Part shown: in pieces, positions 2,108 to 54,252 of the stretch
Layout: every line of letters starts with the position of its first letter
Numbering within the stretch: the stretch's first letter is position 1
Program-made: the position numbers and the translations under genes
The notes under the pieces: model-generated
Told to the model about the DNA's origin: nothing
Seen by the model: the letters and a program-made list of their open reading frames with translations, nothing else
Database searches by the model: none
From: Octopus bimaculoides
Lineage: Eukaryota
Direction of reading: 5' to 3'
Length of the DNA stretch: 64,000 nucleotides
NCBI RefSeq assembly: GCF_001194135.2
Contig: NC_068984.1
Span: 64,489,245-64,553,244, forward strand

Positions 2108-2500
2108 ACTCTTTTACTTGTTTCAGTCATGTGACTGTGGCCCATGCTGGAGCACCGCCTTTAGTCGAACAAATCGACCCCCAGGACTTATTCTTTGTAA
2201 GCCTAGTACTTATTCTATCGTTCTCTCTTGTCTAACCGCTAAGTTACGGGGACGTAAGCACACCAGCATCGGTTGTTGAGCGATGTTGAGGGGTGACAAA
2301 CACAGACACACAAACATATACATACACATACATATGTATATACATATATACGACAGCCTTCTTTCAGTTTCCTACCAAATCCACTCACAAGGCTTTGGTC
2401 GGCCCGAGTGTATATTAGAAGACACTTGTCCAAGGTGCTACGCAGTGGAACTGAACCCGGAACCATGTGGTTCGTAAGCAAGCTACTTACCACACAGCCA
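2108..2500 (-). mobile_element. tRNA-headed octopus SINE, family A (OR-like)
   Basis: Reverse complement of head TGGCTGTGTGGTAAG...CCACATGGTTCCGGGTTCAG, central microsatellite, GATAGAATAAGTACTAGG core and GAAACAAGTAAAAGAG tail. Confidence 0.88.
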
Positions 2501-3582: not shown

Positions 3583-3745
3583 GAAGGGCTTCTTTCAGTT
3601 TCCCTCTACCAAATCCACTCACAAAGCTTTGAGCGGCCCGCAGCTCTAGTAGAAGACACTTGCCCAAGGTCTCACGCAGTTTGACTGAGCCCAGAATCAT
3701 GTGGTTGATAAGCAAGCTACTTACCACACAGCCACTCTTACGCCT
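3324..3745 (-). mobile_element. SINE family A copy
   Basis: Same head, core and tail as 2108-2500. Confidence 0.88.
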
Positions 3746-4942: not shown

Positions 4943-7669
4943 GAGATAGGTTTCTATAACACACCTTGTCTCCAAGCAATCTCCAGGCATGTTATATATA
5001 TTTATATACACATATATGTATATTGATTTTTGTATGTGTGTGTATATATGTGTTTACATATATAAGTATATTTGTTTGTGTCTATATATAAATGATTGTA
5101 TGTGTGTTTCTGCATATGTGTATGTACATATGTGAGTAAGTGCACTGAGGCATATGTAGATACACATAGATATGTACATGTTTATACATATATGTACATG
5201 TGTGTATTCATGCACACTATACTCACCTTTTAGTACATGCCTATAGAATTTTGTACCTATTTACTTTCCATTTGAAAGCTAATCCTGCAAATGCTAATCA
5301 TAATATCGGATGTGATATACTCTAATTGCTGCACATAGTCACACATGATTCAATTTATCCTTGTATTTCACTTGCAATAGTTTTTGCAGCAGTCTTACAC
5401 ACTGAACTATTGAAATATGTGACTAACTATAAATCATCAACTGGCTGTCAATATATTGTTTTATCTCGGTTGCATTATATTACAATATATTTTTGCTCCA
5501 TTTCCTCGCAACTGATACAATTTGAAAATGTATGTTTACTATTTTCAGTATGTTTTAAACAAGTTATCTTTACAGTATAACTGTGGATGTTAACATTATA
5601 TTTATTAGACAGGATTGTATTGTGTGTGCCCTAGCAGGTTTGAAGCTAACCTGAGGAACCTGAAACAACCATCTCCACAGAAATATTTTGTGCACCCTTG
5701 AAAACTTCATGTTTCTTGGCTGCACATTCCTGAAAACTTAAAATTCAATAGATCACTGATACTAGGCAATGAATTATAATTCTTAAAGGGTGTAAATCAG
5801 CTGTTTTCTCAGTGTTTAACAAATAATGTTCACGTAACAATTCTTATCTTTGCAGGCACAAAAAATCTATTGTAACAAAACCGAAATGGTGGATTTTGAT
5901 TTCTTACATATACAAAAGATTGCAGATTAAATAGTAAAACAGAAATAATATTTGTAATATTCATGTCTTGCCTAAGACCATTTCCAACATAAGTGAAGGG
6001 AAATGGTAATAATCTGGAATCATGATGTGGCGTTTTTACTTCCTGAAATTAACATATGTAACACCATAAAAATTTCAGAAATTTAAATATTTATACTGAG
6101 TGAGAAAACCATACTAATGAATTGTAACATTAAGAATGATTCCAAACATAATAGTAATTACCTTAGAACTCCTTAGTAGAGATAATAATGATATTGGTAG
6201 ATAATAATCTAAACTATTGCTTAAACATATTTACTTACTTCTATTAGGTGCAATATTTGCTACAAGATAGCGTAGATTTATAAGCAGAAATCTTTGTCAG
6301 CTTAGTCAGTAACCCTATAGATGAAACATGTGAGAATTTACCAAATGATATTGTGGAAGTGGAAGAGTTAAAGGAGAAAAGTATGAAAAGCTAAATAAAT
6401 TTATTATACAATACAAATGGGAAAAAAAACAGCCAGCAACATATCAAAAGTTTTAGGGATTTTTTCTTTTTTTTTTTTTTTTTCATCTTTATCCACAAAA
6501 TACAATCCAAATTATTGTTATTATTGATAAATTCAGTTTCAGTTGACACATGATTTCACAGTCATTTGCTCATTTTTATCATATTTAGCTGTGAAACTGA
6601 AAAGTCAGTTTAACATACTCATACTCTCATATATATANNNNNNNNNNNNNNNNNNNNNNNNNNNNNNNNNNNNNNNNNNNNNNNNNNNNNNNNNNNNNNN
6701 NNNNNNNNNNNNNNNNNNNNNNNNNNNNNNNNNNNNNNNNNNNNNNNNNNNNNNNNNNNNNNNNNNNNNNNNNNNNNNNNNNNNNNNNNNNNNNNNNNNN
6801 NNNNNNNNNNNNNNNNNNNNNNNNNNNNNNNNNNNNNNNNNNNNNNNNNNNNNNNNNNNNNNNNNNNNNNNNNNNNNNNNNNNNNNNNNNNNNNNNNNNN
6901 NNNNNNNNNNNNNNNNNNNNNNNNNNNNNNNNNNNNNNNNNNNNNNNNNNNNNNNNNNNNNNNNNNNNNNNNNNNNNNNNNNNNNNNNNNNNNNNNNNNN
7001 NNNNNNNNNNNNNNNNNNNNNNNNNNNNNNNNNNNNNNNNNNNNNNNNNNNNNNNNNNNNNNNNNNNNNNNNNNNNNNNNNNNNNNNNNNNNNNNNNNNN
7101 NNNNNNNNNNNNNNNNNNNNNNNNNNNNNNNNNNNNNNNNNNNNNNNNNNNNNNNNNNNNNNNNNNNNNNNNNNNNNNNNNNNNNNNNNNNNNNNNNNNN
7201 NNNNNNNNNNNNNNNNNNNNNNNNNNNNNNNNNNNNNNNNNNNNNNNNNATAATGATAATATCTGTAGATAGAATTAATATCTCTCTTGGATGTAAGGCT
7301 CCTGCTTTGTAAGGGATGTTGGGGGGTGGGATTGGGTGGAATATAATAGATTATTTTTTGTTTTTTTTTAGTTTCAGTAAATTGTTATCATTTGTCTTTG
7401 TATTTTATTTATGCAGCAGGGATGGAAAGAACTGTCTGTGGCTGAGATTTGACCAACCAGAAAAATCTGGTACCAAACTTGATATTGTGAACCATCAAGT
7501 TTAGCCCTATGTAACACCTGCAACAACTTTGAAATCTTAATAAATAATGATGTTTGTAGTTAGTATCACAGTCATAATTTTATCTCTTTCCTGTATACTA
7601 TTTTTGTTTAAATTAATATATTTATAATAACAATAATAATAATGCATTGTTGTCATCACTATTAATGTT

Positions 7670-7830: not shown

Positions 7831-10439
7831 CACACTTTGTGATATCTTTTCCACTTCTTTGCATTCTTAATTCAGTTTCCACTTGCCATCACCAGGCCCA
7901 TCAAGGAAAGGTTAAAAGGGATAGGCTTCCAATGTCAAATAGTACTACATCAGTAGGAGCAACATCTTGCTTGCATCAAATATACATGAATACAAAATGT
8001 AGGCCCTGCACTAGAAGGTAGGACAGAAAATAAAATTAATATAAGTGTTGGGTGTGATGGACATAGTTGTCAGAGTCAATCAGTCTTTAAAAACTGACAC
8101 TGTGACCTGGTTTCAATTCCAAATAGTAGCCACATTCTATTACATGAATAACACGGCAGAGTGAGCAGTTTCCTCTACTTCCCCTTACTTCGCAAACCTG
8201 AGGCTTTTTGCCAATATAATACTAAAAAAATTCCTTTACAGTAGAGCTAAACTAATGCAATTTGAGAAAAGTATGAATTAATTCTGCATCTATACACTTC
8301 CTCTTCTTCTAGATGTAGGAAATTATGCCTAATTAAGAAAAGACAATTATTTTAAAATTTATCTTTAATAATGTATCTATTCCTATTGTTTCCTTCTTTA
8401 ATATATTTTCTTTCAAAATTTGCCAATAGTTAAATAACTACAGCTCATAAACTTTAAAAGGGAAATATAAAAAGAAAATTAGCAACATATTTTGGTGATT
8501 AACACAGCCTCTAGTCAGTGATTATTGTTCTAATTGTATTTGCTAGCCAAAGTAGTTTTTCTTTGAATTATATAATGAATCTAAAAGACAACATAATAAA
8601 CTAAATAACTTAAATTTTTTGCAAATGAGGGCTTAATCATGCTTATCTATATAGTATGTCAATGCTTGTAAGGTCTCATATATATTTTATTTTACTAAAA
8701 ATTAGTTTTGTCAAAAGGTTATTTTTTCTGTCTGTGTGCTTGTGTGACTTACATAGTACCTAATAATAATCTAGCTAATGAAGTAGCAATGCAAAAGGGA
8801 TGAAACTCCAAAAGAATCCCTTACTCATCAAAAATTTGTTGTTTTAAATATATATANNNNNNNNNNNNNNNNNNNNNNNNNNNNNNNNNNNNNNNNNNNN
8901 NNNNNNNNNNNNNNNNNNNNNNNNNNNNNNNNNNNNNNNNNNNNNNNNNNNNNNNNNNNNNNNNNNNNNNNNNNNNNNNNNNNNNNNNNNNNNNNNNNNN
9001 NNNNNNNNNNNNNNNNNNNNNNNNNNNNNNNNNNNNNNNNNNNNNNNNNNNNNNNNNNNNNNNNNNNNNNNNNNNNNNNNNNNNNNNNNNNNNNNNNNNN
9101 NNNNNNNNNNNNNNNNNNNNNNNNNNNNNNNNNNNNNNNNNNNNNNNNNNNNNNNNNNNNNNNNNNNNNNNNNNNNNNNNNNNNNNNNNNNNNNNNNNNN
9201 NNNNNNNNNNNNNNNNNNNNNNNNNNNNNNNNNNNNNNNNNNNNNNNNNNNNNNNNNNNNNNNNNNNNNNNNNNNNNNNNNNNNNNNNNNNNNNNNNNCA
9301 AAGGAAGAGTTCTGGAAGGGAAAATTATTTAACTTCTTTTCCCCCAAAATTTTCTGTTTTCTTTTCATTTATTTTTTTTCTTTCTTTATTACTTTGTTAT
9401 TATTTATTTTTTCTTGTTGTTGTTGTTCTTTTTCAAACAGTCACATGATGGGAAAGGGTTTCAGTCCAGATCTGGAATGGAGAAGAGGCGAAGGAAGAGA
9501 AAGAAGAGGAGGAGAATATAGCTGCTTTGGGATTGTTTTGTTGCCATCTCTGCTTTTGTTTGTTTGGTTTTGGTTTCTGTTTTTTTTTTTTTTTTTCAAA
9601 TATATTTCTTTATTTTTTCCAAAGCTCCCAGATAACTCTTTTTTTTTTCTCTCTGGATGACTTAGGGAAATTGGTTCATATATATTTGTTTCATAATTTG
9701 TTTTTTTCCTATATCTCCATATACCCATTTAGAAAATGGCATGTCAACATTTTTGTAATGCTTCTTTTGTTACCTGATATATATATACTTATATATATAT
9801 ATCCAACTGTAATAAGAAGAAGAATGAACAAAACAAATGTTAATTGTGTCTTATTGGGCTATTTTTAAATAACAGGGAGTATGGAAATTTTTTTCCAGTT
9901 TTACACATTCAAATTTTATGGATATTCCTTAACTGAATTGTACTTTCGATAGTAACTTGATTATTTGGTAATTTTTTCTTAAAATTTGAAAACTTATTGA
10001 TATTACATTATTCACTAATCTTATAATTCATTCACATTTTTCTTTAACCTTTTTCTGTCATATAACAGACAATTAGATCAACCCATAGCTTAATTTTCTC
10101 ATAGAGTTTTCAATATATTTAGTCAACTAATATATATTCAATATATTTAGTCAAATAATATATATATTTCAACTACACATTTATCTTATCTTGCATTAAT
10201 GAGAGCAGATCATATTAATATAATAATGATGCAGGATGTAATGAATTTTAAATATATTTTTACAACTTATTAACAAAGTATATATCAATTCAGTCATCAC
10301 AATCAACAACATTGATATTATTATTCATTACAATAACAACTCTGAATTGAATATAAATAGGAGTATTCTAAACAACTATGAATAAATTAGTTTAAATATA
10401 ACCCTTGGCAAATAATATAATTTTAAAATACGTACATAT

Positions 10440-14731: not shown

Positions 14732-15325
14732 AATGCTTATGGAAACCTGACCCCCAGAGATCACTGCAAATGTGATCTGGCTGCCAGGGCTCATGTACTC
14801 CTTATTGAATCCCCTTTGGTACCACTGCTCTATTTCCTGGAAGATAATACTCCACATCTACAGTGCATTGGCCTTCTCTATTCTCCTGTATGGAGCAGAA
14901 ATGTGGCCCCTCTCAAAGATATTAGCAAAGAGGATTGACAGCTTTGATAGCAAAACCCTGAGAACCAGTGAGAGCATCAGGTGGTACCATCACGTTTCCA
15001 ACAAAGAACTGCATGCATGCATCAGCCCGCAGCCTCCCATCTCATAGCTATCTGTCACATGCACTGGTATGGATATGTCCTCTGTCTCCCACGAGATCAT
15101 CCTACCAGGGATTTACTCTCATCCAACACGTCAGTGCAGGTTGGAAGAGGCCTCATGGCAGGCCCTGCACATGTCTGAATGTATATTGGAGAAGATCTCC
15201 AGAGGCACAATGTCACCTTGAAAGATGCTGAGGGGCTGGGATGTGATTTTCAGCAATGAAGAGCACTGATGGACCTGGCAGGTTCTATGCATGATCAAGC
15301 AAGAGCATGAAGCAAGCAAGCATTA
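14732..15325 (+). mobile_element. Decayed RTE-type LINE 3' end with a (CAAG)-like tail
   Basis: IYSALAFSILLYGAEMWPLSKILAKRIDSFDSKTLR...RWYHHVSNKEL, then W.GYVLCLP...WKRPHGRP. These match the RTE LLYG.ETW and W.RP.GRP motifs. Confidence 0.8.
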
Positions 15326-15469
15326 TAGAAACAGACACCTGAATGTGTAAACATGTCTTGCTTCAAACTAAAGCTGTGTGGACAAAATATTAACCTTATC
15401 ACGAAGTAATTGCATTTCATTTATGAAAATGCTGGAGTGGAGATAAATGATAGCGTACAAGAAGTAAGG

Positions 15470-16450
15470 TAGAAAGGATCCTTAACCAAATTCCTCACAG
15501 GCAAGAGACAGCAATACAAATTCTTCTGGGTTGAGTAATAGTGACAGCAGGGGTGGAGTAGGCATATTGTTAGTTGAAAAAGTGATTCAGACAGTCAGGA
15601 TATTTGAAAGGATAATTCAGACGGGGCTAATTATAGGTAACTTAACCATGATGGTTATCTCTGCATATGCACCACAGGCAAGATTGACAGTGATTTCAAC
15701 AGACATTATTGGCCAATATATTTATCAATAGCCTATGTAGCATAAAAGCTGTGGATGTGGTTCAAAATATGAAGAGGATGTAAGGTTTGTGGAGTTGTGC
15801 AATGCAATCAATCTAACAATTTGCTACACACATTTTAGGAAACCAGCCAATTGCCTCATCACCTACCAATCTGGTGAACACACAAGTCGGATTACATTCT
15901 CACTAGAAAGTGGAACAGAAGAGCTACTGTAAATACCAAAACCTTTTCTGACAAAGAATGCAATACACAACACATATAAGTGGCTAGGCAGGCATAGAAA
16001 TGCAAGGCAAAAAGGAGTAAGATATGTAAACTAAAAGATGCTTTAATTGGGAACAGATTTGCAGAAACTCCAAATGATGCATTAACAGCAATAACTACAT
16101 ACTGAGAGAAACATGTGGCTGGAGCAGAGAAACATGTGGCTGGAGCAGAGAAACATGTGGCTGGAGCAGAGAAACATGTGGCTGGAGCAGAGTCCCAACC
16201 AAGCCAAAAATAACATCACTGAATAATACAGGTCATAGTACAGAAACAGCCAATAGAGAAATTTGGAAAGCCAGGAAGTTAAGTGGTAGTAAGGAGCATT
16301 ATCAAATGGCTAGAAAAGCAGCTATGTGACAGGTATATTTAGTTAAGGGTGAATTAGGAAGGGAGAAATTGGCACATCTGCGATGTGAGGATCAGAGGCA
16401 TGAAATGTTAACGATTAGAAGACAACGTGGAGAGAGAACAGTAACGTATC
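15470..16450 (+). mobile_element. Decayed RTE LINE endonuclease (APE) region
   Basis: GGVGILLVEKV, VISAYAPQ, FVELCNAINLTICYTHFRKP...ITYQSGEHTS and ETCGWSRVPTKPKIT motifs, with stops and frameshifts. Confidence 0.75.
16105..16192 (+). repeat. Perfect 21-bp tandem repeat, 4.2 copies
   Basis: AGAGAAACATGTGGCTGGAGC repeated; CATGTGG recurs at 16112, 16133, 16154 and 16175. Confidence 0.97.
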
Positions 16451-17117: not shown

Positions 17118-17869
17118 CAAAAATGTTTAAATATTTTCATTAAATCAGACTGATTTGATATCTGATCATCATCAAGTGATACTGGATGTATGCATAGCAC
17201 AAGACTGGATTCAAACTTGGAACCTTTATTTCTAAATGGCAATCAGAGATAAACTTATCAAAACATTTTTCATCTTCAAAGATGAGCTTAAGTCTGATAT
17301 ATAAATTTAACATCTTATCTCAGACATTTAGACATTTCCAAGTTCCAATGAATTAATGTCTTGTATTACACTCTTTTTACTATTTGAAATGTTAAATGGA
17401 TAAAAATTGATCTTACTGTGGGATATTTTCACATTTATTGTATTCAAAATAATGTTCAAGGGCAAAAAATCTCTAAATCAAAGTGATGTATTCAATTTTG
17501 ATATGGTTTTTAAATGTGAAACTGGATATTAATACTTGTTTGCTAAAACAATTAATTTTGAAAGGGAGCAGCAAAACTGGTTTATCTTTTTCAATCTTTA
17601 GATAAATGGTAAAGATTACTGTTACAATACGCTTTAAAGTATATATTTATAGGATAGATTTTTGTGAAATTATATACATTATTTCACAAATATTTTAAGC
17701 TATAAGTTGGCTTTACATGAAGGAATTCAAAATGATCAATGAAAGATGAAGGAACAAAGTTCAAGGGCATTATATTGGCCTTTAGTGACAATGTAATACA
17801 AATAGCATTAAACAATGACATTTAATTTTAGTGGAAAACAGTATATAAATAACATTTTTGGACACTTAC

Positions 17870-18090
17870 GTAACTGTTTATTGTTTGTTTGTACAAATCT
17901 ATATTTTGCCATGAAACCAAGGGCATCATAGATGCCATTAGATTTGAATGTGACTTTGAAAAATTCGCCATCGGACTTGACCGTATTATTCTTCCCCGTT
18001 CTCAAACCACAGAACCGATCCATTTTTCTATCTTGTGTGGTGAAGAAGTTAGAGAAAGAAACATAATCACTTTTATGTTCTTCGTCACAG
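17870..18090 (-). CDS. sol-1: Exon encoding the C-half of the last CUB domain
   Basis: Acceptor ttcatttcctttcctttcttcctttcAG and donor GTAAGT at 17869. 221 nt, phase 2 in and phase 1 out. Encodes (N)CDEEHKSDYVSFSNFFTTQDRKMDRFCGLRTGKNNTVKSDGEFFKVTFKSNGIYDALGFMAKYRFVQTNNKQL. The SDYV.FSNF...DRK..R.CG and SDG.FF.VTF.SN motifs match my recollection of the terminal CUB of SOL-1. Confidence 0.95.
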
Positions 18091-19154
18091 CTGAAAGGAA
18101 GAAAGGAAAGGAAATGAATTAATATTATGAAACTGAAAAATTAAGTTTCTGTAAATATACTGGTACTGCAAAAATAAAAATAATTTTGTAAATGTCCTTG
18201 TTCTGCTTCTACTTTACTATTTGTAGTCTTAAAATGATAAAAATTAAACCCTTACTTTATAACAAGTTCACATTTGTTTAATGCATTTTATACAATGTTC
18301 CTTTATACAAAGAGCCCTTCTTTTACATATGCTCTTGTCATTTTATCCATGTTTGTATATTTTATGTTTTATATGCAACAGTTTCAAATTTGAATAGAGT
18401 AGAATATCATGGAATAGAATTAAAATAATTCTATTATATAATATTCTAATATATTCAAATTGGATGGTAGGAGATAATTATTTTTCTCCTGGACACAACA
18501 ATGGACATTCTCCATATAATATTCAGTAGAGTGACTATTATAGTTAAAATTTCCCACAGCTTTGAAGTAGTTTGTTGAATTATAAGATAATTAAATGATA
18601 ACCCATTTCTAGTTGCCAAATAGTGAGATTAAAGACTTTCTCACATTCCAGTTGTAAAACATCTTAGCTGCTCTTAATTAAAATGGCAAAACCAGGCTAT
18701 CATAAAACCGAATGTTACAGTATTTAGTTGTAGCTCTGTCAAGTTGGCTTTCAAATGCTGCAGAGATCAAATGTACCTCCATCCATCAACGATTGATAAA
18801 ATAAATATCAATAATTCAATTAATTATCCCACCCAAGCCACCAAAAATATTGGATTTGTTTCTACTTAAAATAAATCAATATGTGAATATCACAAAAGGA
18901 AATTTCTTAATTTCCACATATTTAGTACATTTTGTGGGGAGAAATTAGAAATTTTAATTGAATAAAATTTAAGAACTCTTGCCACAAATCCTACAGATTA
19001 ATAGTCCACTTACAGTAACATTACATGGATGATTGTGGATGTAATGTTTTCTAGACATTTTCCGTTCAATATTTGATGTTGTAAGAATGTAAATTCAAGA
19101 AACCATTTTATCTTAACAGCTACTAAAATAAGAAATGAGAGCATTTTTACTTAC

Positions 19155-19326
19155 TTTGGTTTAACACCATCAACTTCAAATTTTGTGAAGTCAATTATTA
19201 CTTTTTCACCTTTCTGACCATAAAACAGATAGTGACATTCCGTTATTCTTGGGTATTTTCCTGGATAATTTGGTGAAGTGAAAAACCCAGAAGATGCTAA
19301 AATACTCTTATAGTTGAACCCACATA
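19155..19326 (-). CDS. sol-1: Exon encoding the N-half of the last CUB domain
   Basis: Acceptor cttgctcttttcAG and donor GTAAGT at 19154. 172 nt, phase 1 in and phase 2 out. Encodes CGFNYKSILASSGFFTSPNYPGKYPRITECHYLFYGQKGEKVIIDFTKFEVDGVKP, with the canonical CUB G.FTSPNYP..YP...C.Y motif. Confidence 0.95.
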
Positions 19327-21773: not shown

Positions 21774-23010
21774 CAGGGTGCAGTGAATAAATTGTCTTCT
21801 ACATTAAGCAAAAATGAAAATAACACTGACATCTCATTTTAGCAGATATATTTACCAAAATTACATAAAAATACCTTGAAATACTAAAGAGTAAATGTAT
21901 TCAATAAAATAGCCATTGGCTTCAATCACAGCCTTTAGACGACTTCTGAATTTCCTGCAACTCTTCTGGATGGTTTCCTTGTTTAAGTCAGTGAATGCAG
22001 CCATAATCCTTGCCATCAGTTCATGTTTGGTCTTACAAGGAGTTTTGTGGCTCTCTCACTCAACTGCACCCCACACATGATAATCAAGGGAGTAGCAGTC
22101 TGGGGAGCTAGGTGGTCAGATGTTAGAGGTGATGCGGTCACAGAAATTTCTGAGAGTCATGACCGGGTTCTCCTGCTTGTGTGGCATGGTGCAGAGTCTG
22201 TTGCCAGACATAGGATCTTCCAACAGCCACCCTCTTGATCCAGGACAGCACTACCTCCTCCAGGCCTCCATGTTGAGTCTGGGAAGATGAATGGATGCAT
22301 AACATCACCATCACTCCAAACACCATGATGTTGACTGGATGTTGATTTTTGTCACTCTTGGTACATGTTTTGGGGACATGGCAAGCCAACAGTTGTATGA
22401 GTTCACCATCTGATCCCACCAGAAGCTTTTCTCATCTGAGAAAAACCAAAACATGTCTGGTTGGATGGAATGCTTGAGTTTGTTCAAAGGCTTTGTAGTG
22501 TGGTCTTCCCTCTTGTCCATGATGGCTTGGGATAAAAATTGGCCCTTTCTCCTGTTGTATGAGGAATACCAAATGTCTTCATGCATTACCTGCCTGATAA
22601 GAAACTCAGACACTCCCATGTCTCTGGCAATGGACTTGACTAACTTGGAGGAATCATGGCCTTGATATCATCAACAAATTCAGGAGTTCTTTTCTGATCA
22701 GAACAATCAGAGTGAGTTTTCCAAGCTGCCATACCTTTGAAATCACCATTAGACTAATCCAACTCTTTTTGAATTCTCTGCACTGTCCTCAGATAGACAC
22801 CCAAACACTCTGAAATGTTTGTATTGCCAAGCAGTACAGCATATCATTTCCAAATTTCTGGCAGAGTGAATTCCATCATTGTGCTGTTTTTCTCACAGAT
22901 GGTGCCCAGCTGACCCTACTATATTGTGTAATCAACAAAATCAAAAACAAATGATGCACCTGCATGAAATTAAAGCTATAAAATGGCGACAATTTACCCA
23001 TTACACCCTG
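21774..23010 (-). mobile_element. Near full-length decayed Tc1/mariner transposon, DD37D (maT) type
   Basis: 23-bp imperfect TIRs (CAGGGTGCAGTGAATAAATTGTC versus reverse complement CAGGGTGTAATGGGTAAATTGTC), TA on both sides (21772-73, 23011-12), length 1237 bp, and an internal transposase remnant. Confidence 0.92.
21898..22879 (-). pseudogene. Frameshifted DD37D transposase
   Basis: Motifs WFFSDEK, HPVNIMVFGV, YVWQQ(D)SAPCH, PPSSPDCYSLDYHVWGAVER and EAVIEANG are recovered across frameshifts and stops. There are 37 residues between the second and third catalytic Asp after restoring two 1-nt deletions. Confidence 0.85.
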
Positions 23011-27472: not shown

Positions 27473-27513
<41 letters not shown>

Positions 27514-27889
27514 NNNNNNNNNNNNNNNNNNNNNNNNNNNNNNNNNNNNNNNNNNNNNNNNNNNNNNNNNNNNNNNNNNNNNNNNNNNNNNNNNNNNNNN
27601 NNNNNNNNNNNNNNNNNNNNNNNNNNNNNNNNNNNNNNNNNNNNNNNNNNNNNNNNNNNNNNNNNNNNNNNNNNNNNNNNNNNNNNNNNNNNNNNNNNNN
27701 NNNNNNNNNNNNNNNNNNNNNNNNNNNNNNNNNNNNNNNNNNNNNNNNNNNNNNNNNNNNNNNNNNNNNNNNNNNNNNNNNNNNNNNNNNNNNNNNNNNN
27801 NNNNNNNNNNNNNNNNNNNNNNNNNNNNNNNNNNNNNNNNNNNNNNNNNATCTATATATATATATATATGTGTGTGTGTATGTGTGTGT

Positions 27890-28090
27890 TTGTGTTTGTC
27901 CCCCTAGCATTGCTCGACAACCGATGCTGGTGTGTTTGTGTCCCCATCACCTAGCAGTTCGGCATAAGAGACCGATAGAATAAGTACTAGGCTTACAAAG
28001 AATAGGCCCCGGGGTCGATTTGCTCGACTAAATGCGGTGCTCCAGCATGGCTGCAGTCAAATGACTGAAACAAGTAAAAGAGTAAAAGAG
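27890..28090 (+). mobile_element. SINE family A, 3' half (young)
   Basis: GACAACCGATGCTGGTGTG...GATAGAATAAGTACTAGG...GAAACAAGTAAAAGAGTAAAAGAG. Confidence 0.88.
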
Positions 28091-38069: not shown

Positions 38070-38460
38070 GTGGAGGCACAATGGCCCAGTGGTTAGGGCA
38101 GCGGACTCGCGGTCATAGGATCGCGGTTTTGATTCCCAGACCGGGCGTTGTGAGTGTTTATTGTGCAAAAACACCTAAAGCTCCACGAGGCTCCGGCAGG
38201 GGATGGTGGCGAACCCTGCTGTACTCTTTCACCACAACTTTCTCTCACTCTTACTTCCTGTTTCTGTTGTGCCTGTAATTCAAAGGGTCAGCCTTGTCAC
38301 ACTGTGTCACGCTGAATATCCCCGAGAACTACGTTAAGGGTACACGTGTCTGTGGAGTGCTAAGCCATTTGCACGTTAATTTCATGAGCAGGCTGTTCCG
38401 TTGATCGGATCAACTGGAACCCTCAACGTCGTAAGCAACGGAGTGCCAACAAAACAAATA
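38070..38460 (+). mobile_element. Full-length, apparently young tRNA-derived SINE with an 11-bp TSD
   Basis: Perfect A-box TGGCCCAGTGG, B-box-like GGTTTTGATTCC, CpG-rich body, and (CAA)-type tail. TTACTCTAGTT occurs at 38059-38069 and 38461-38471. Confidence 0.9.
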
Positions 38461-39692
38461 TTACTCTAGTTACCATATATTTGGTACCCTCTCTTGTGCT
38501 ACTTATTAGATCACCTAGCATTCAGGAGCTATCAATTATTTCTAGGAAACCTGAAGATTTCAAATTATTTCATGAGTGCTTTGATAAACTAACTACTAAG
38601 CATCTGCACAAGAAATACCTTTTTCTCTGTCAACCTGATTGAAGGGTTAACGTCTTTTGTGCTCTCATACTTTGCATAATTTGGTACAGAGTTACTACCT
38701 GATTAGTATTCTGCATATTATGGTCACTGTCTTAATGGTAGTAAGATTCTGTCTTCTTCCCTTCTAAATGTTTTGCTATTGCCTGATTTAATTAAAAACA
38801 CTTCAATTCTTTGCTTTGTTTCTATGCTCAAAATTCTTCTCAAATTCTGTAACAGATTCAGCAATGAGAATTAAAACCATCACTGTACAAGAGTGTCCAC
38901 AGAAAGCCGTATTGTAATCTCACCTGTTATGGCTTGAATAACTATGACAAAGAGGTGGAAGCTGAGAGTTAAATCCTGGTGGACATCTAGATGCATTCTA
39001 AATTCCTCAATGTTAACTCTTGCATTGCTAACAATGCCTTTTTGTCTGAGTTGCACATCTCTCAAAAGACATTTATCTACACCCGGTTTTCTTGGTAATC
39101 ACTGCACTACAGGACAGAAAACCTTGTGAAAGAGCTTTTCCAAGCCAACAAATGCTAGATATAACAGTTTGCTCTTAGCTAAAAATTACTTTGATAACTG
39201 GCTCACTAAGAAAAGGAATTGATGATACATCATCCAGACACAATGCATTTTGTTTAATTTGATTGCCTTTCAAATTAATTATGAAATAAACCTCTTTCAC
39301 GCTTATAATTTGGTTCAACAGTTTCATATCTCCATAGCTGCTTCTTTCGAGATGCTTTCAGTCATTGAAGTAATATAAACATATTGGTGTTACATATGCA
39401 CACGTGCGCACACATGTATACATAATACATTGCACTAAAATCATTTCAACCATTGGTCATCTTTGAGTACCTGAAGATGATCAGTGGTATAATGTAATGC
39501 AAATTATTAAGTAAAAGAATATGGAACTCTACACCTGTATTTTGTAATGAGCACAAAGAGGGGAGTTCCATATTCACTAAGTATGAGCAAGGAGCCACTA
39601 AACACAACAGAATGAAAGGAGAAATAAATAACACTAATACTACTTACATTATCTACATTTGACGGATATTTGCCCTCATCTTGTTTGCTGTT

Positions 39693-39738
39693 AACACAAC
39701 GTTTTGGCTGATATACCCACCAGCCTTCATCAGGTATC
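39693..39738 (-). ncRNA. Minimal type I hammerhead ribozyme motif, G12A copy
   Basis: Minus strand reads GATAC-CTGATGA-A-GGCTG-gtgggtatat-CAGCC-AAAA-CGTT-GTGTT. Stems I and II and the palindromic ACGT stem III are intact. GAAA is mutated to AAAA. Confidence 0.75.
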
Positions 39739-39971
39739 TTGGGGAAATTTCAAATCTGGGTTCTCATTCCTAAGATATTTTTCGATGTTATTACTACTAT
39801 TATTATTATTCAGGTCACTGCTTGGAATCAAACTTGGAATCTTAGCATTAGTAGCCTGAGCTCTTAACCACTATGCCATATACCTGTAGTGGTTAAGAGC
39901 GTGGGCTACTAATCCCAAGATTCAGAGTTCAATTCCAAGCAGTGATCTGAATAATAATAATAATAATAATG

Positions 39972-40017
<46 letters not shown>

Positions 40018-40058
40018 CAACATCGCAAAATGAGAACCCAGGTTCAAAATTTCTCCAA

Positions 40059-40104
40059 GACACCTGATGAAGGCTGGAGGGTATATCAGCTGAAATGTTG
40101 TTTT
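40059..40104 (+). ncRNA. Minimal type I hammerhead ribozyme motif, degenerate copy
   Basis: GACAC-CTGATGA-A-GGCTG-gagggtatat-CAGCT-GAAA-TGTT-GTTTT. Intact CUGAUGA and GAAA core boxes and a 5-bp stem II. Stem III is altered (ACGT to ATGT) and stem I has one mismatch. Confidence 0.75.
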
Positions 40105-40369
40105 AACAACAAACAAGATGAGGACAAATATCCATCAAATGTAAATAATGTACATAATTCCTCATCTCTTTAATATAGAACTGTACTAATACTACTATTA
40201 ATAAATATACGTCAGCCACATTTTCGTTGAATGTATTAACTGCTATATGCTTTTAAATTTTCAAATAAAAATATAACTTCAGATTCCTCAAGAGGTAATT
40301 CATTCCATTATAAACATTATAACATAGAAGTTCTCAAAAATCAAAATTGTTTCAGTATATGATACTTAC

Positions 40370-40560
40370 TTCTGACAAATGCATAATCTGCCTGGAACCC
40401 CGTGACTGTGTGTGAATATGTTAGACTTCTAAACACAACTGTCATTCTGTGTTCATTGGACATGTACATTGGTGGCAATTCTCTTCCACATTTTGTATCT
40501 AAATCTGTAGGCTCACCATTTATATATATTGTTATGGTAACTGAATCTGCTGCCTGGCAA
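40370..40560 (-). CDS. sol-1: Exon 1 of 5 visible in a SOL-1-like multi-CUB gene (second half of a CUB domain); gene is 5'-partial
   Basis: Minus-strand acceptor cttctttttttatatttcAG and donor GTAAGT at 40369. 191 nt, phase 2 in and phase 1 out. Encodes CQAADSVTITIYINGEPTDLDTKCGRELPPMYMSNEHRMTVVFRSLTYSHTVTGFQADYAFVR, with CUB C-half hallmarks (CG, S..RMTVVFRS, GF.A.Y.F). The gene symbol is by family resemblance only. Confidence 0.9.
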
Positions 40561-48407: not shown

Positions 48408-48968
48408 GGCGTGGTTTAGTGGTTCAAAAGTTTGCCTCCGAACCACAGGGTTTCAAGTTCAGTCCCACAGCATGACACCTTGGGCAAGTGTTTCTACTAT
48501 ATCCCTGGGCTAACCAAAGCCTTGCATGTGGATTTGATAGTTAGAAATTGAAAGAAGGTTGTCATGTTCAATGTATTTATTTGTTCTGATATAGCTTGAT
48601 TTTTGTAAATGGCATTCATATCCAATATTCTGTATAAACATGTATAAACATTTCCTTACTTGGAAGCATATAAGAGTTGGAAACAAGAAGTGTCAGAAAA
48701 TTTGCCTCAATAAACTCCACTTGACCCATGCAGGCATGGAAAAGTGAGCATTAAAACCAGGACTGTGGAGTCGGAGTTGGGGCCATGGAGTCAGAGTCGA
48801 AAACAATTAAGGGGTAGCTGGAGTTGGAGTCAGTAAAATAGACCACAATCATTTAATTACATAGAGAAGTTGAAGGTGCCAATAGTAGAGGAGTCAGAGT
48901 CGAAGTCTTTGTTTCAGCTCCACAGCCCTGATTAAAACAGTGATAATGATGAGGAAGAAGAGGATGAG
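48408..48968 (+). mobile_element. SINE with a family A head and an RTE-type tail, interrupted by the hAT MITE
   Basis: Head GGCGTGGTTTAGTGG...CCTTGGGCAAGTG. Tail ACCCATGCAGGCATGGAAAAGTGAGCATTAAAAC[MITE]AGTGATAATGATG. Confidence 0.75.
48758..48930. mobile_element. 173-bp hAT-type MITE nested in a SINE tail
   Basis: TIRs CAGGACTGTGGAG and CTCCACAGCCCTG, perfect 8-bp TSD ATTAAAAC (48750-57, 48931-38), and internal GGAGTC(G/A)GAGTC repeats. Confidence 0.9.
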
Positions 48969-53837: not shown

Positions 53838-54252
53838 ACTTTTATTTGTTTCATTCATTTGACTGTGATCATGCTGGAGCACTGTCTTTAGTCAAACAAA
53901 CTGACCCCAGGACTTATTCTTTATAAGCCTAGTACTTATTCTATTGGTCTCTTTTGCCAAACTATTAAGTTACAGGGACATAAACACAGCAACATCAGTT
54001 GTCAAGCAATGGTGTTGGTGGGGACAAACACAGACACACATACACAAACATATACACAAACACACACACACATACATATATATACTTATACATACGATGG
54101 GCTTCTTTCAATTTCTGTCTACCAAACCCACTCTCATGGCTCAAGCTGGCCCAAGGCTATAGTAGAAGACACTTGCCGAAGGTGCCATGCAATGGGACTG
54201 AACCTGGAACTATGTGGTTAGTAGCAAGCTACTTACCACACAGCCACTCTTG
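53838..54252 (-). mobile_element. SINE family A copy
   Basis: Same modules. Confidence 0.85.

What the first reader, a model, noticed from the sequence alone, without database searches (positions are those of the whole stretch)
39693..40104. tRNA-headed SINE-like unit carrying a Penelope-type minimal hammerhead ribozyme
Seen: each arm of the 39645-40184 element runs tRNA-like head (A/B boxes; CTAC..A....AAGATTC..GTTC.ATTCC resembles tRNA-Arg), then (AAT)n, then a hammerhead motif. Combining the two copies gives GACAC-CUGAUGA-A-GGCUG-(10-nt loop)-CAGCC-GAAA-CGUU-GUGUU. That is stem I of 5 bp, both conserved core boxes, stem II of 5 bp, and a loop-less palindromic ACGU stem III with predicted cleavage after GUU. 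Established: minimal type I hammerheads with a palindromic stem III that works as a dimer occur in the terminal repeats of Penelope-like elements (PLEs) and in retrozymes. Classical SINEs take their 3' ends from LINEs and do not normally carry a hammerhead. Inference: this may be a non-autonomous Pol III-driven retroelement that borrowed a PLE terminal repeat, using self-cleavage to define its RNA end and PLE RT/GIY-YIG endonuclease for mobility. I do not know of such a family being described in cephalopods, but I cannot search the literature.
Basis: partly seen in the sequence, partly recalled or inferred. Interest (0 to 1): 0.9.

Follow-up and report, generated by a model that had tools for sequence, protein, structure and literature searches.

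The report
Hammerhead-bearing tRNA-like retroelement, inverted pair
An intron here holds one decayed insertion made of two head-to-head copies of a short tRNA-like mobile element that carries a minimal hammerhead ribozyme motif, and the shape of the insertion suggests it was copied in by Penelope-type retrotransposon enzymes; this is an interesting but not unprecedented kind of genomic parasite.

Summary
39645-40184 is one insertion flanked by a 12-nt target duplication. It consists of two inverted copies of a roughly 275-nt unit: a tRNA-like head, (AAT)n, then a 3' module with a minimal type-I hammerhead motif. A descriptor I wrote finds this motif only in these two arms of the 64-kb window, and found none in 300 random windows. 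Neither copy is intact. The left copy begins one base before tRNA position 1, has a perfect A box and has canonical A-to-B box spacing, so the unit looks like a Pol III SINE. The head-to-head pair, the 32-nt extension at one end only, the variable-type TSD and the microsatellite-like target match the published anatomy of Penelope-like element insertions. The copy ends do not coincide with the predicted cleavage site, so the idea that self-cleavage defines the RNA end is not supported. I could retrieve no other family copies and no PLE partner, and I could not identify the organism. tRNA-like SINE-like elements with hammerheads (schistosome Sm-alpha) and PLE-dependent retrozymes are already known. 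I rate this a probable new member of a known kind, resting on a single decayed locus.

The parts
39633..39644 (.). Left target-site duplication, ACTAATACTACT
   Evidence: It is identical to the 12-mer at 40185-40196. In the real window, a 12-mer recurs at this offset in 0.3% of random trials.
39645..39886 (-). Left copy, 242 nt, read on the minus strand. It is complete at its 5' end but lacks the last 32 nt of the unit.
   Evidence: The reverse complement of 39860-39886 is CAGGTATATGGCATAGTGGTTAAGAGC. The sense strand has no run of four or more T.
39868..39878 (-). Pol III A box, TGGCATAGTGG, a perfect match to TRGCNNAGTGG. It is present only in the left copy.
   Evidence: 3 matches in the window against 0.38 expected. 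It aligns with the heads of another tRNA-SINE family in the window.
39824..39834 (-). B box of the left copy, AGTTTGATTCC. The CpG-restored ancestor is AGTTCGATTCC.
   Evidence: a TG versus CA double difference against the right copy. It starts 44 nt after the A box starts, as in a tRNA.
39693..39738 (-). Hammerhead motif of the left copy. All helices can pair, but G12 is mutated to A. Predicted cleavage lies between 39698 and 39697.
   Evidence: (descriptor hit with one core mismatch).
39887..40184 (+). Right copy, 298 nt. It is 5'-truncated by about 13 nt, which removes the first half of the A box, and it carries the full 3' end.
39926..39936 (+). B box of the right copy, AGTTCAATTCC
39950..40014 (+). 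Internal (AAT)n microsatellite of the right copy, 21.7 units. The left copy has about 7 units at 39790-39810.
40059..40104 (+). Hammerhead motif of the right copy. Both core boxes are intact. C11.1 and C15.2 are each changed to U, and stem I has one mismatch. Predicted cleavage lies between 40099 and 40100.
   Evidence: the only strict descriptor hit in the window; 0 hits in 300 random windows.
40153..40184 (+). 32-nt extension ('tail') present at one end only, CATAATTCCTCATCTCTTTAATATAGAACTGT
   Evidence: It is absent from the left copy. It has no similarity to the flanks or to the rest of the element beyond what shuffled tails give.
40185..40196 (.). Right target-site duplication, ACTAATACTACT

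Best explanation
This is one old, dead insertion of a short non-autonomous retroelement of about 275 nt. The unit has three parts: a tRNA-derived Pol III head about 76 nt long, an internal (AAT)n tract, and a 3' module of about 165 nt that contains a Penelope-type minimal type-I hammerhead with no helix III loop. Such a hammerhead can be active only as a dimer.

Shown:
- The anatomy, the single TSD, the inverted pair, the one-sided 32-nt end, the intact A box and the tRNA-like spacing.
- The hammerhead motif is significant within the window, and the sites where the two copies disagree are explained by CpG decay.

Inferred:
- The unit was transcribed from its own A and B boxes as an uncleaved monomer. 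A lone minimal hammerhead cannot form helix III.
- It was copied into a degenerate AAT/ACT microsatellite by the RT and GIY-YIG nickase of a Penelope-like element acting in trans.
- Both nicked target strands primed cDNA synthesis. One cDNA reached the RNA 5' end but was primed 32 nt inside the 3' end. The other started at the true 3' end and stopped 13 nt short of the 5' end. Joining them gave the head-to-head pair.
- The 3' module, including the hammerhead, is the part taken from a PLE terminal repeat and serves as the handle recognised by the PLE enzyme. Cleavage would matter only for tandem or multimeric transcripts.

Since insertion both copies have drifted about 6-7% each, and both ribozymes are now damaged.
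For: - Inverted arms and alignment.
- 12-nt TSD around the whole composite, with no TSD around either copy alone.
- Left copy starts one base before tRNA position 1. It has a perfect A box, a B box 44 nt downstream, and (AAT)n starting at tRNA position 76.
- No T4 terminator inside the left copy.
- The hammerhead descriptor hits only the two arms. There were 0 strict hits in 300 random windows, and the relaxed scan adds nothing.
- The extra base after A9, G10.1-C11.1, the palindromic C15.2-G16.2 and the 5-bp helix I match the published PLE min-HHR traits. Pairs of min-HHRs 100-700 bp apart on opposite strands were reported in Schistosoma.
- PLE insertions are described as having an inverted 5'-truncated copy at the 5' end, a 30-40-bp tail at one end only, variable TSDs and a microsatellite bias.
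- The 3' end has no poly(A) or simple-repeat tail.
- TG/CA double differences show that CpG decay explains the broken core and the broken B box.
Against: - Only two copies exist, and they descend from one event, so there is no family consensus and no covariation. The helix changes are ordinary transitions to wobble pairs.
- Rfam finds no hammerhead and no tRNA even at E<=10, and ARAGORN finds no tRNA.
- The acceptor and T stems of the head cannot pair.
- Nearest-neighbour folding prefers other dimer folds (-29.2 kcal/mol) over the double hammerhead (-20.7 kcal/mol).
- No PLE RT/GIY-YIG sequence was seen in the window, though that check was by eye only. No PLE terminal repeat could be compared.
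- A strict-descriptor hit rate below about 1 per 37 Mb still allows chance hits across a genome of several gigabases.
- Published min-HHRs cleave poorly in vitro.
Confidence: 0.55

Rival explanations
1. It is an ordinary LINE-dependent tRNA-SINE, and the hammerhead resemblance is a coincidence. The inverted pair arose by LINE-type twin priming or by a later DNA-level palindrome.
For: - Rfam finds no hammerhead.
- There is no covariation and only two related copies.
- The window is full of other tRNA-SINEs and holds RTE-like fragments.
- Folding does not favour the hammerhead dimer.
Against: - The descriptor statistics argue against chance within the window.
- Four traits specific to PLE min-HHRs, which were not needed to find the core, are all present.
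- There is no poly(A) or microsatellite 3' tail.
- Classical twin priming inverts part of a single copy and does not give two overlapping copies.
- A DNA-level copy of the right arm could not supply the 13 nt (first half of the A box) that only the left arm has.
Confidence: 0.2
2. The arms are 5'-truncated 3' ends of a longer element, either an autonomous PLE or a long non-autonomous derivative. Its terminal repeat happens to contain a tRNA-like stretch, so there is no SINE and no Pol III transcription.
For: PLE insertions are typically strongly 5'-truncated and often paired head-to-head. Dispersed solo and paired min-HHRs have been interpreted as truncated PLEs.
Against: - The left copy ends exactly one base before tRNA position 1, with a perfect A box. 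That would be a coincidence for random truncation of an element several kilobases long.
- The tRNA-length head, the tRNA-like box spacing and the lack of internal T4 runs fit a Pol III unit.
Confidence: 0.15
3. It is a foldback or MITE-type DNA transposon with terminal inverted repeats of about 240 bp.
For: It has long inverted arms, a flanking direct repeat and a very stable hairpin.
Against: - The ends are asymmetric: 32 nt lie between the right arm and the TSD.
- A 12-bp TSD is not typical of DNA transposon superfamilies (my own knowledge, not tested here).
- The Pol III head lies at the centre of the element and points outward.
- No other copy is present in the window.
Confidence: 0.05

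Closest known systems
Sm-alpha / Sj-alpha SINE-like retroposons of Schistosoma
   Same: They are short non-autonomous elements with a tRNA-like Pol III promoter (thousands are called as tRNA-Gln pseudogenes), followed by a type-I hammerhead whose weak helix III favours action in multimers.
   Different: Sm-alpha carries a canonical hammerhead that Rfam-type searches detect, and it is often tandemly repeated. The motif here has no helix III loop at all and is missed by Rfam. The unit has an internal (AAT)n tract, the locus is an inverted pair rather than a tandem, and the host is a different lophotrochozoan lineage.
[quoted passage not shown] 2017)
   Same: The motif architecture matches: CUGAUGA, an extra base, a helix II starting with G-C, GAAA, palindromic 15.2/16.2, no loop 3 and a short helix I. 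Such motifs often occur dispersed or as nearby pairs on opposite strands.
   Different: Those motifs are described in PLE terminal repeats or as presumed truncated PLEs, not downstream of a tRNA-type Pol III head. Helix II here is 5-6 bp, against 6-8 bp in the described families.
Animal non-LTR retrozymes
   Same: They are non-coding elements of about 170-400 nt that bear a hammerhead and are proposed to depend on PLE enzymes. Their sequences are related to PLE pLTRs.
   Different: Retrozymes are tandem repeats with classical type-I hammerheads, are expressed as circular RNAs and have no tRNA-like promoter. Here the copy ends lie at a tRNA-type start and well past the cleavage site, which does not fit units that run from one cleavage site to the next.
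tRNA-derived SINEs of octopus (OK, OR1, OR2; tRNA-Core and tRNA-Deu families)
   Same: They share a tRNA-derived head with A and B boxes. The window holds several such families.
   Different: This unit shows no CORE or Deu domain. Its 3' end has no LINE-type tail. No described octopus SINE is reported with a hammerhead in the papers I could search.

Membership tests
Hammerhead ribozyme, minimal type I (PLE type) | Conserved core C3-U4-G5-A6-N7-G8-A9 and G12-A13-A14 | tested here: met
   The right copy has both boxes intact. The left copy has G12A, explained as CpG decay. It is met for one copy and for the inferred ancestor, not for both copies.
Hammerhead ribozyme, minimal type I (PLE type) | Helices I and II flank the core; A15.1-U16.1 and a non-G base at position 17 | tested here: met
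   Helix II is 5 bp in both copies. Helix I pairs 5/5 in the left copy and 4/5 in the right. Both read A...U then U17.
Hammerhead ribozyme, minimal type I (PLE type) | PLE-type traits: an unpaired base between A9 and 10.1, G10.1-C11.1, palindromic 15.2-16.2, and no loop 3 | tested here: met
   The motif reads CUGAUGA-A-G...C-GAAA-CG-U in the left copy and in the ancestor. The traits are as listed in PMC4209133.
Hammerhead ribozyme, minimal type I (PLE type) | Covariation or compensatory changes across a family | tested here: inconclusive
   Only two related copies exist. The changes are C-G to U.G transitions. No further copies could be retrieved.
Hammerhead ribozyme, minimal type I (PLE type) | Self-cleavage, as a dimer | not testable with these tools
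   This needs in vitro transcription. The thermodynamic model does not favour the double hammerhead, but that result is not decisive.
Rfam hammerhead families (e.g. Hammerhead_1) | A covariance-model score at or near the gathering threshold | tested here: not met
   There was no hit at gathering score or at E<=10. That is expected for a motif without a helix III hairpin.
tRNA-derived SINE (Pol III) | Internal A and B boxes at tRNA-like spacing near the 5' end | tested here: met
   The A box is TGGCATAGTGG at unit positions 9-19. The B box is at 53-63, a 10/11 match after CpG restoration. Only the left copy has the full A box.
tRNA-derived SINE (Pol III) | Recognisable tRNA cloverleaf or assignable parent tRNA | tested here: not met
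   ARAGORN finds none and there is no Rfam tRNA hit at E<=10. By inspection, the acceptor and T stems do not pair. The tRNA-Arg assignment is unverified.
tRNA-derived SINE (Pol III) | Many dispersed copies, each with its own TSD | not testable with these tools
   This is the only locus in the window. No host genome is available.
PLE-mobilised (non-autonomous Penelope-like) element | Insertion anatomy: an inverted 5'-truncated copy at the 5' end, a 30-40-bp tail at one end, a TSD of variable length, and a microsatellite target | tested here: met
   compared with the description in PMC8557442. This is a single locus.
PLE-mobilised (non-autonomous Penelope-like) element | 3' end shared with an autonomous PLE (RT plus GIY-YIG) in the same genome | not testable with these tools
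   No PLE coding sequence was noticed in the window (by eye). No host genome or PLE library could be reached.

The most novel reading that the evidence does not exclude
This locus may be a fossil of a true Pol III-transcribed SINE family that depends on Penelope-like RT/GIY-YIG enzymes rather than on a LINE. The family would have formed when a PLE terminal fragment with its minimal hammerhead landed in the (AAT)n tract behind a tRNA-like gene. In this reading the hammerhead module acts as the recognition handle for the PLE enzyme, and the family leaves PLE-style head-to-head insertions. This would be the first SINE-PLE partnership with a defined anatomy, and the first in a mollusc.
Probability: 0.35. 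Interest if true: 0.65.

Novelty: new member of a known kind. Interest (0 to 1): 0.5.

Why it matters
Penelope-like elements are the least understood class of retrotransposons. How they transpose, why they leave tandem and inverted copies, and what their hammerheads do are all open questions.

A short Pol III-driven passenger that PLE enzymes copy would be a compact natural reporter for that mechanism. Its ends, truncation points and head-to-head junctions can be read at thousands of loci, and a 275-nt unit is easy to rebuild for retrotransposition or cleavage assays.

It would also extend the SINE-LINE partnership rule to a third retroelement class. It would link the schistosome Sm-alpha elements, the animal retrozymes and the dispersed min-HHRs into one picture.

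For this particular locus the practical consequence is small. It is a dead intronic insertion that can form a long RNA hairpin next to an exon.

Tried and rejected
Attempts to collect more family copies all failed.
- Translating the conserved antisense frame of the element and searching the protein collection gave nothing.
- Searching a neighbouring CUB exon gave nothing.
- Looking up a window ORF gave nothing on record.
- Searching TE proteins from the window gave only eight relatives at or below 49% identity, none from the host.
- Exact DNA pattern scans of metagenome contigs (twice), viral contigs (twice) and genome contigs (twice) found nothing. The one exception was seven matches of a 19-mer in bacterial MAGs. 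That is the number expected by chance, and none of them carries the hammerhead.

Searching paper text for the element's own sequence strings found nothing relevant. Supplements with PLE or hammerhead sequences are not held, and two key papers are not held.

Readings I rejected:
- An assembly palindrome artefact, because the arms differ by 12%.
- The Rfam 'miRNA' hits, which are just the hairpin formed by the two heads.
- Two independent insertions, because neither copy has its own TSD.
- The 32-nt tail as copied flank, because it shows no similarity above shuffled controls.

Folding of the monomer and dimer was uninformative. The organism could not be identified. It is compatible with the SINE-rich, CORE-SINE-bearing window.

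Full report
WHAT IS THERE. The region 39645-40184 is a long imperfect palindrome. The arms 39645-39768 and 40029-40152 are 89% complementary, and 39761-39873 and 39887-39999 are 77% complementary. A gapped alignment of the right arm (+ strand) with the reverse complement of the left arm gives 191/218 identical columns (87.6%). It shows 27 substitutions, 21 of them transitions. The only large gaps are a length difference in an (AAT)n tract, an 11-nt indel, and 32 nt present only at the outer end of the right arm. The arms differ by 12%, so this is not an assembly artefact. Read in its own sense, each arm runs tRNA-like head, (AAT)n, about 55 nt, a hammerhead-like motif, then 48 nt. No other copy of any part other than AAT repeats exists in the 64-kb window, by blastn, pattern search or nhmmer.

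THE HAMMERHEAD MOTIF. The right copy (40059-40104) reads GACAC-CUGAUGA-A-GGCUG-GAGGGUAUAU-CAGCU-GAAA-UGUU-GUUUU. The left copy (39738-39693, minus strand) reads GAUAC-CUGAUGA-A-GGCUG-GUGGGUAUAU-CAGCC-AAAA-CGUU-GUGUU. Neither is a complete hammerhead. The right copy has both core boxes but a G.U at 10.1-11.1, U at 15.2 and one stem-I mismatch. The left copy has every helix (stem I with two G.U pairs) but G12 changed to A.

At 40091/92 the copies read TG versus CA, and at 40096 T versus C. These are the two possible deamination products of a single ancestral CpG. The same TG/CA signature occurs in the B box (39930/31, restoring GTTCGATTCC) and at 40045/46.

I wrote a descriptor for this motif: helix I at least 4 of 5 bp, CUGANGA, 0-1 extra base, helix II at least 4 bp, GAAA, a complementary 15.2/16.2 pair, U16.1, H17, then helix I. 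It hits only these two places on either strand of the window. The right arm is a strict hit and the left arm a hit with one core mismatch. In 300 first-order Markov windows of the same composition there was no strict hit, and 0.077 hits per window with one mismatch. A relaxed version allowing the U3-A8 core and 1-3-bp helix III hairpins adds nothing, against 0.09 hits expected per window. Within this window the motif is therefore not a chance find, although a genome of several gigabases could hold some chance hits.

The motif also shows the traits that Cervera and de la Pena list as emerging from PLE minimal hammerheads without being searched for. These are a base between A9 and 10.1, G10.1-C11.1, palindromic 15.2/16.2, a short helix I and no loop 3. 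They also report pairs of such motifs 100-700 bp apart on opposite strands in Schistosoma (PMC4209133).

Against it, Rfam gives no hammerhead hit even at E<=10, which is expected without a helix III hairpin. Two related copies give no covariation. ViennaRNA prefers other dimer folds (-29.2 kcal/mol) to the double hammerhead (-20.7 kcal/mol).

THE HEAD. The '13-nt spacer' between the arms is not a spacer. The reverse complement of 39860-39886 is CAGGTATATGGCATAGTGGTTAAGAGC. It contains TGGCATAGTGG, a perfect match to the Pol III A box TRGCNNAGTGG, which has three matches in the window against 0.38 expected. This stretch aligns with the 5' ends of another tRNA-SINE family in the window. The right copy starts at TAGTGG and lacks the first half of the A box.

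In the left copy the A box starts at unit position 9 and the B box (AGTTTGATTCC; ancestral AGTTCGATTCC) at position 53. That 44-nt offset equals tRNA positions 8 and 52. The copy therefore starts one base before tRNA position 1, and (AAT)n begins at position 76, where a tRNA ends. The left copy has no T4 run in the sense strand.

The head is not a foldable tRNA. ARAGORN finds none, Rfam tRNA gives no hit at E<=10, and the acceptor and T stems do not pair. The tRNA-Arg assignment is not verified.

THE INSERTION. An identical 12-mer, ACTAATACTACT, lies at 39633-39644 and 40185-40196. In the real window a 12-mer recurs at that offset in 0.3% of trials. It brackets the whole composite, and neither copy has a duplication of its own. 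The target reads as a degenerate AAT/ACT microsatellite. Between the right arm and the right TSD lie 32 nt (40153-40184) that the left copy lacks and that resemble nothing nearby. There is no poly(A) or simple-repeat 3' tail.

Craig et al. describe PLE insertions as strongly 5'-truncated and often with an inverted 5'-truncated copy directly adjacent at the 5' end. They also describe a 30-40-bp extension present at only one end, TSDs of variable length, and a bias towards microsatellites (PMC8557442). The locus matches each of these points. This evidence is independent of the ribozyme motif.

A simple model fits all the coordinates, but it is an inference. Both nicked target strands primed cDNA on the element's RNA. 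One cDNA was primed 32 nt inside the 3' end and ran to the RNA 5' end. The other was primed at the true 3' end and stopped 13 nt short. The full unit would then be about 275 nt.

WHAT THE ENDS SAY ABOUT THE RIBOZYME. Predicted cleavage lies between 40099 and 40100 in the right copy and between 39698 and 39697 in the left. Both copies run straight through it and end 85 and 53 nt beyond it, and the left copy begins at the tRNA-type start. The template was therefore an uncleaved transcript. That fits a hammerhead that cannot act as a monomer. The more likely role of the 3' module is as the part recognised by the PLE enzyme, with cleavage relevant only to multimeric transcripts, or with the ribozyme as a passenger. 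Craig et al. raise that last possibility for PLE hammerheads in general.

WHAT COULD NOT BE DONE. No other family member, no PLE partner and no host genome could be reached. The organism is not identified. The element lies on the sense side of an intron of a minus-strand CUB-domain gene, and the best match of one of that gene's exons is an annelid protein. The window is rich in tRNA-SINEs, including CORE-type ones, as reported for octopus. If the two copies were identical at insertion, each has drifted about 0.068 substitutions per site (Jukes-Cantor, my calculation).

COMPARISON AND VERDICT. Schistosome Sm-alpha and Sj-alpha elements are tRNA-like, Pol III, SINE-like retroposons with hammerheads. 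Animal retrozymes are argued to be non-autonomous PLE derivatives. Dispersed PLE min-HHRs are known in many metazoans. I found no paper describing a hammerhead-bearing SINE in cephalopods or other molluscs, within a library that lacks most subscription journals.

The best reading is a tRNA-headed, PLE-mobilised, hammerhead-bearing non-autonomous element. That makes it a new member of a known kind. Confidence is about 0.55 because everything rests on one decayed locus.

Noticed in passing
window 39645-40184, minus strand (sense of the host gene): In a pre-mRNA the element would fold into a hairpin of about 250 bp (-304 kcal/mol, z = -31). It lies about 200 nt downstream of a CUB exon's donor site. 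That makes it a plausible long-dsRNA substrate for ADAR or RNAi. The weak Rfam 'miRNA' hits at 39821-39941 are this hairpin.
   Followed up: partly
window 40383-40560, 19154-19300, 17850-18090 (minus strand): These are exons encoding CUB-domain halves of one minus-strand gene. The closest representative protein is an annelid (Paralvinella palmiformis) CUB-domain protein, KAK2141303.1. No same-species protein was found in the collection.
   Followed up: partly
window 38070-38440 (+): A different tRNA-derived SINE with an intact A box (TGGCCCAGTGG at 38082-38092). It retains many CpGs, so it looks much younger than the hammerhead element.
   Followed up: no
window 48417-48480 (+), 54184-54241 (-), 2435-2495 (-), about 3655-3680 (+): Several copies of another tRNA-SINE family. 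Their bodies carry the CORE-like motif ACTTGCCCAAGGTC, and their heads align weakly with the head of the hammerhead element.
   Followed up: partly
window 40041-40051 (+) and 39756-39746 (-): After CpG restoration the 3' module contains GGTTCGAAATT. This is a second B-box or T-arm-like motif just upstream of the hammerhead. The module may itself descend from a truncated tRNA-related element.
   Followed up: no
window 39860-39873 (-) and 39887-39900 (+): The D-arm string TAGTGGTTAAGAGC also occurs in a 94-nt human ncRNA, CBL-2 (PMC1904266). From memory I recognise that RNA as resembling the head of MIR/CORE-type SINEs. This is a lead to the head's origin, not a test.
   Followed up: partly
window 21864-22667 (-) and 14751-15728 (+): A decayed, frameshifted Tc1/mariner-type transposase, and RTE-like RT and endonuclease fragments. 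The closest database proteins are 49% identical or less.
   Followed up: partly
window 6600-7250, 8850-9300, 27500-27900 and other sites: The window contains 2074 N in several gaps and many (TA)n, (CA)n and (AT)n tracts. These are typical of a short-read draft assembly of a repeat-rich genome with 31% GC.
   Followed up: no
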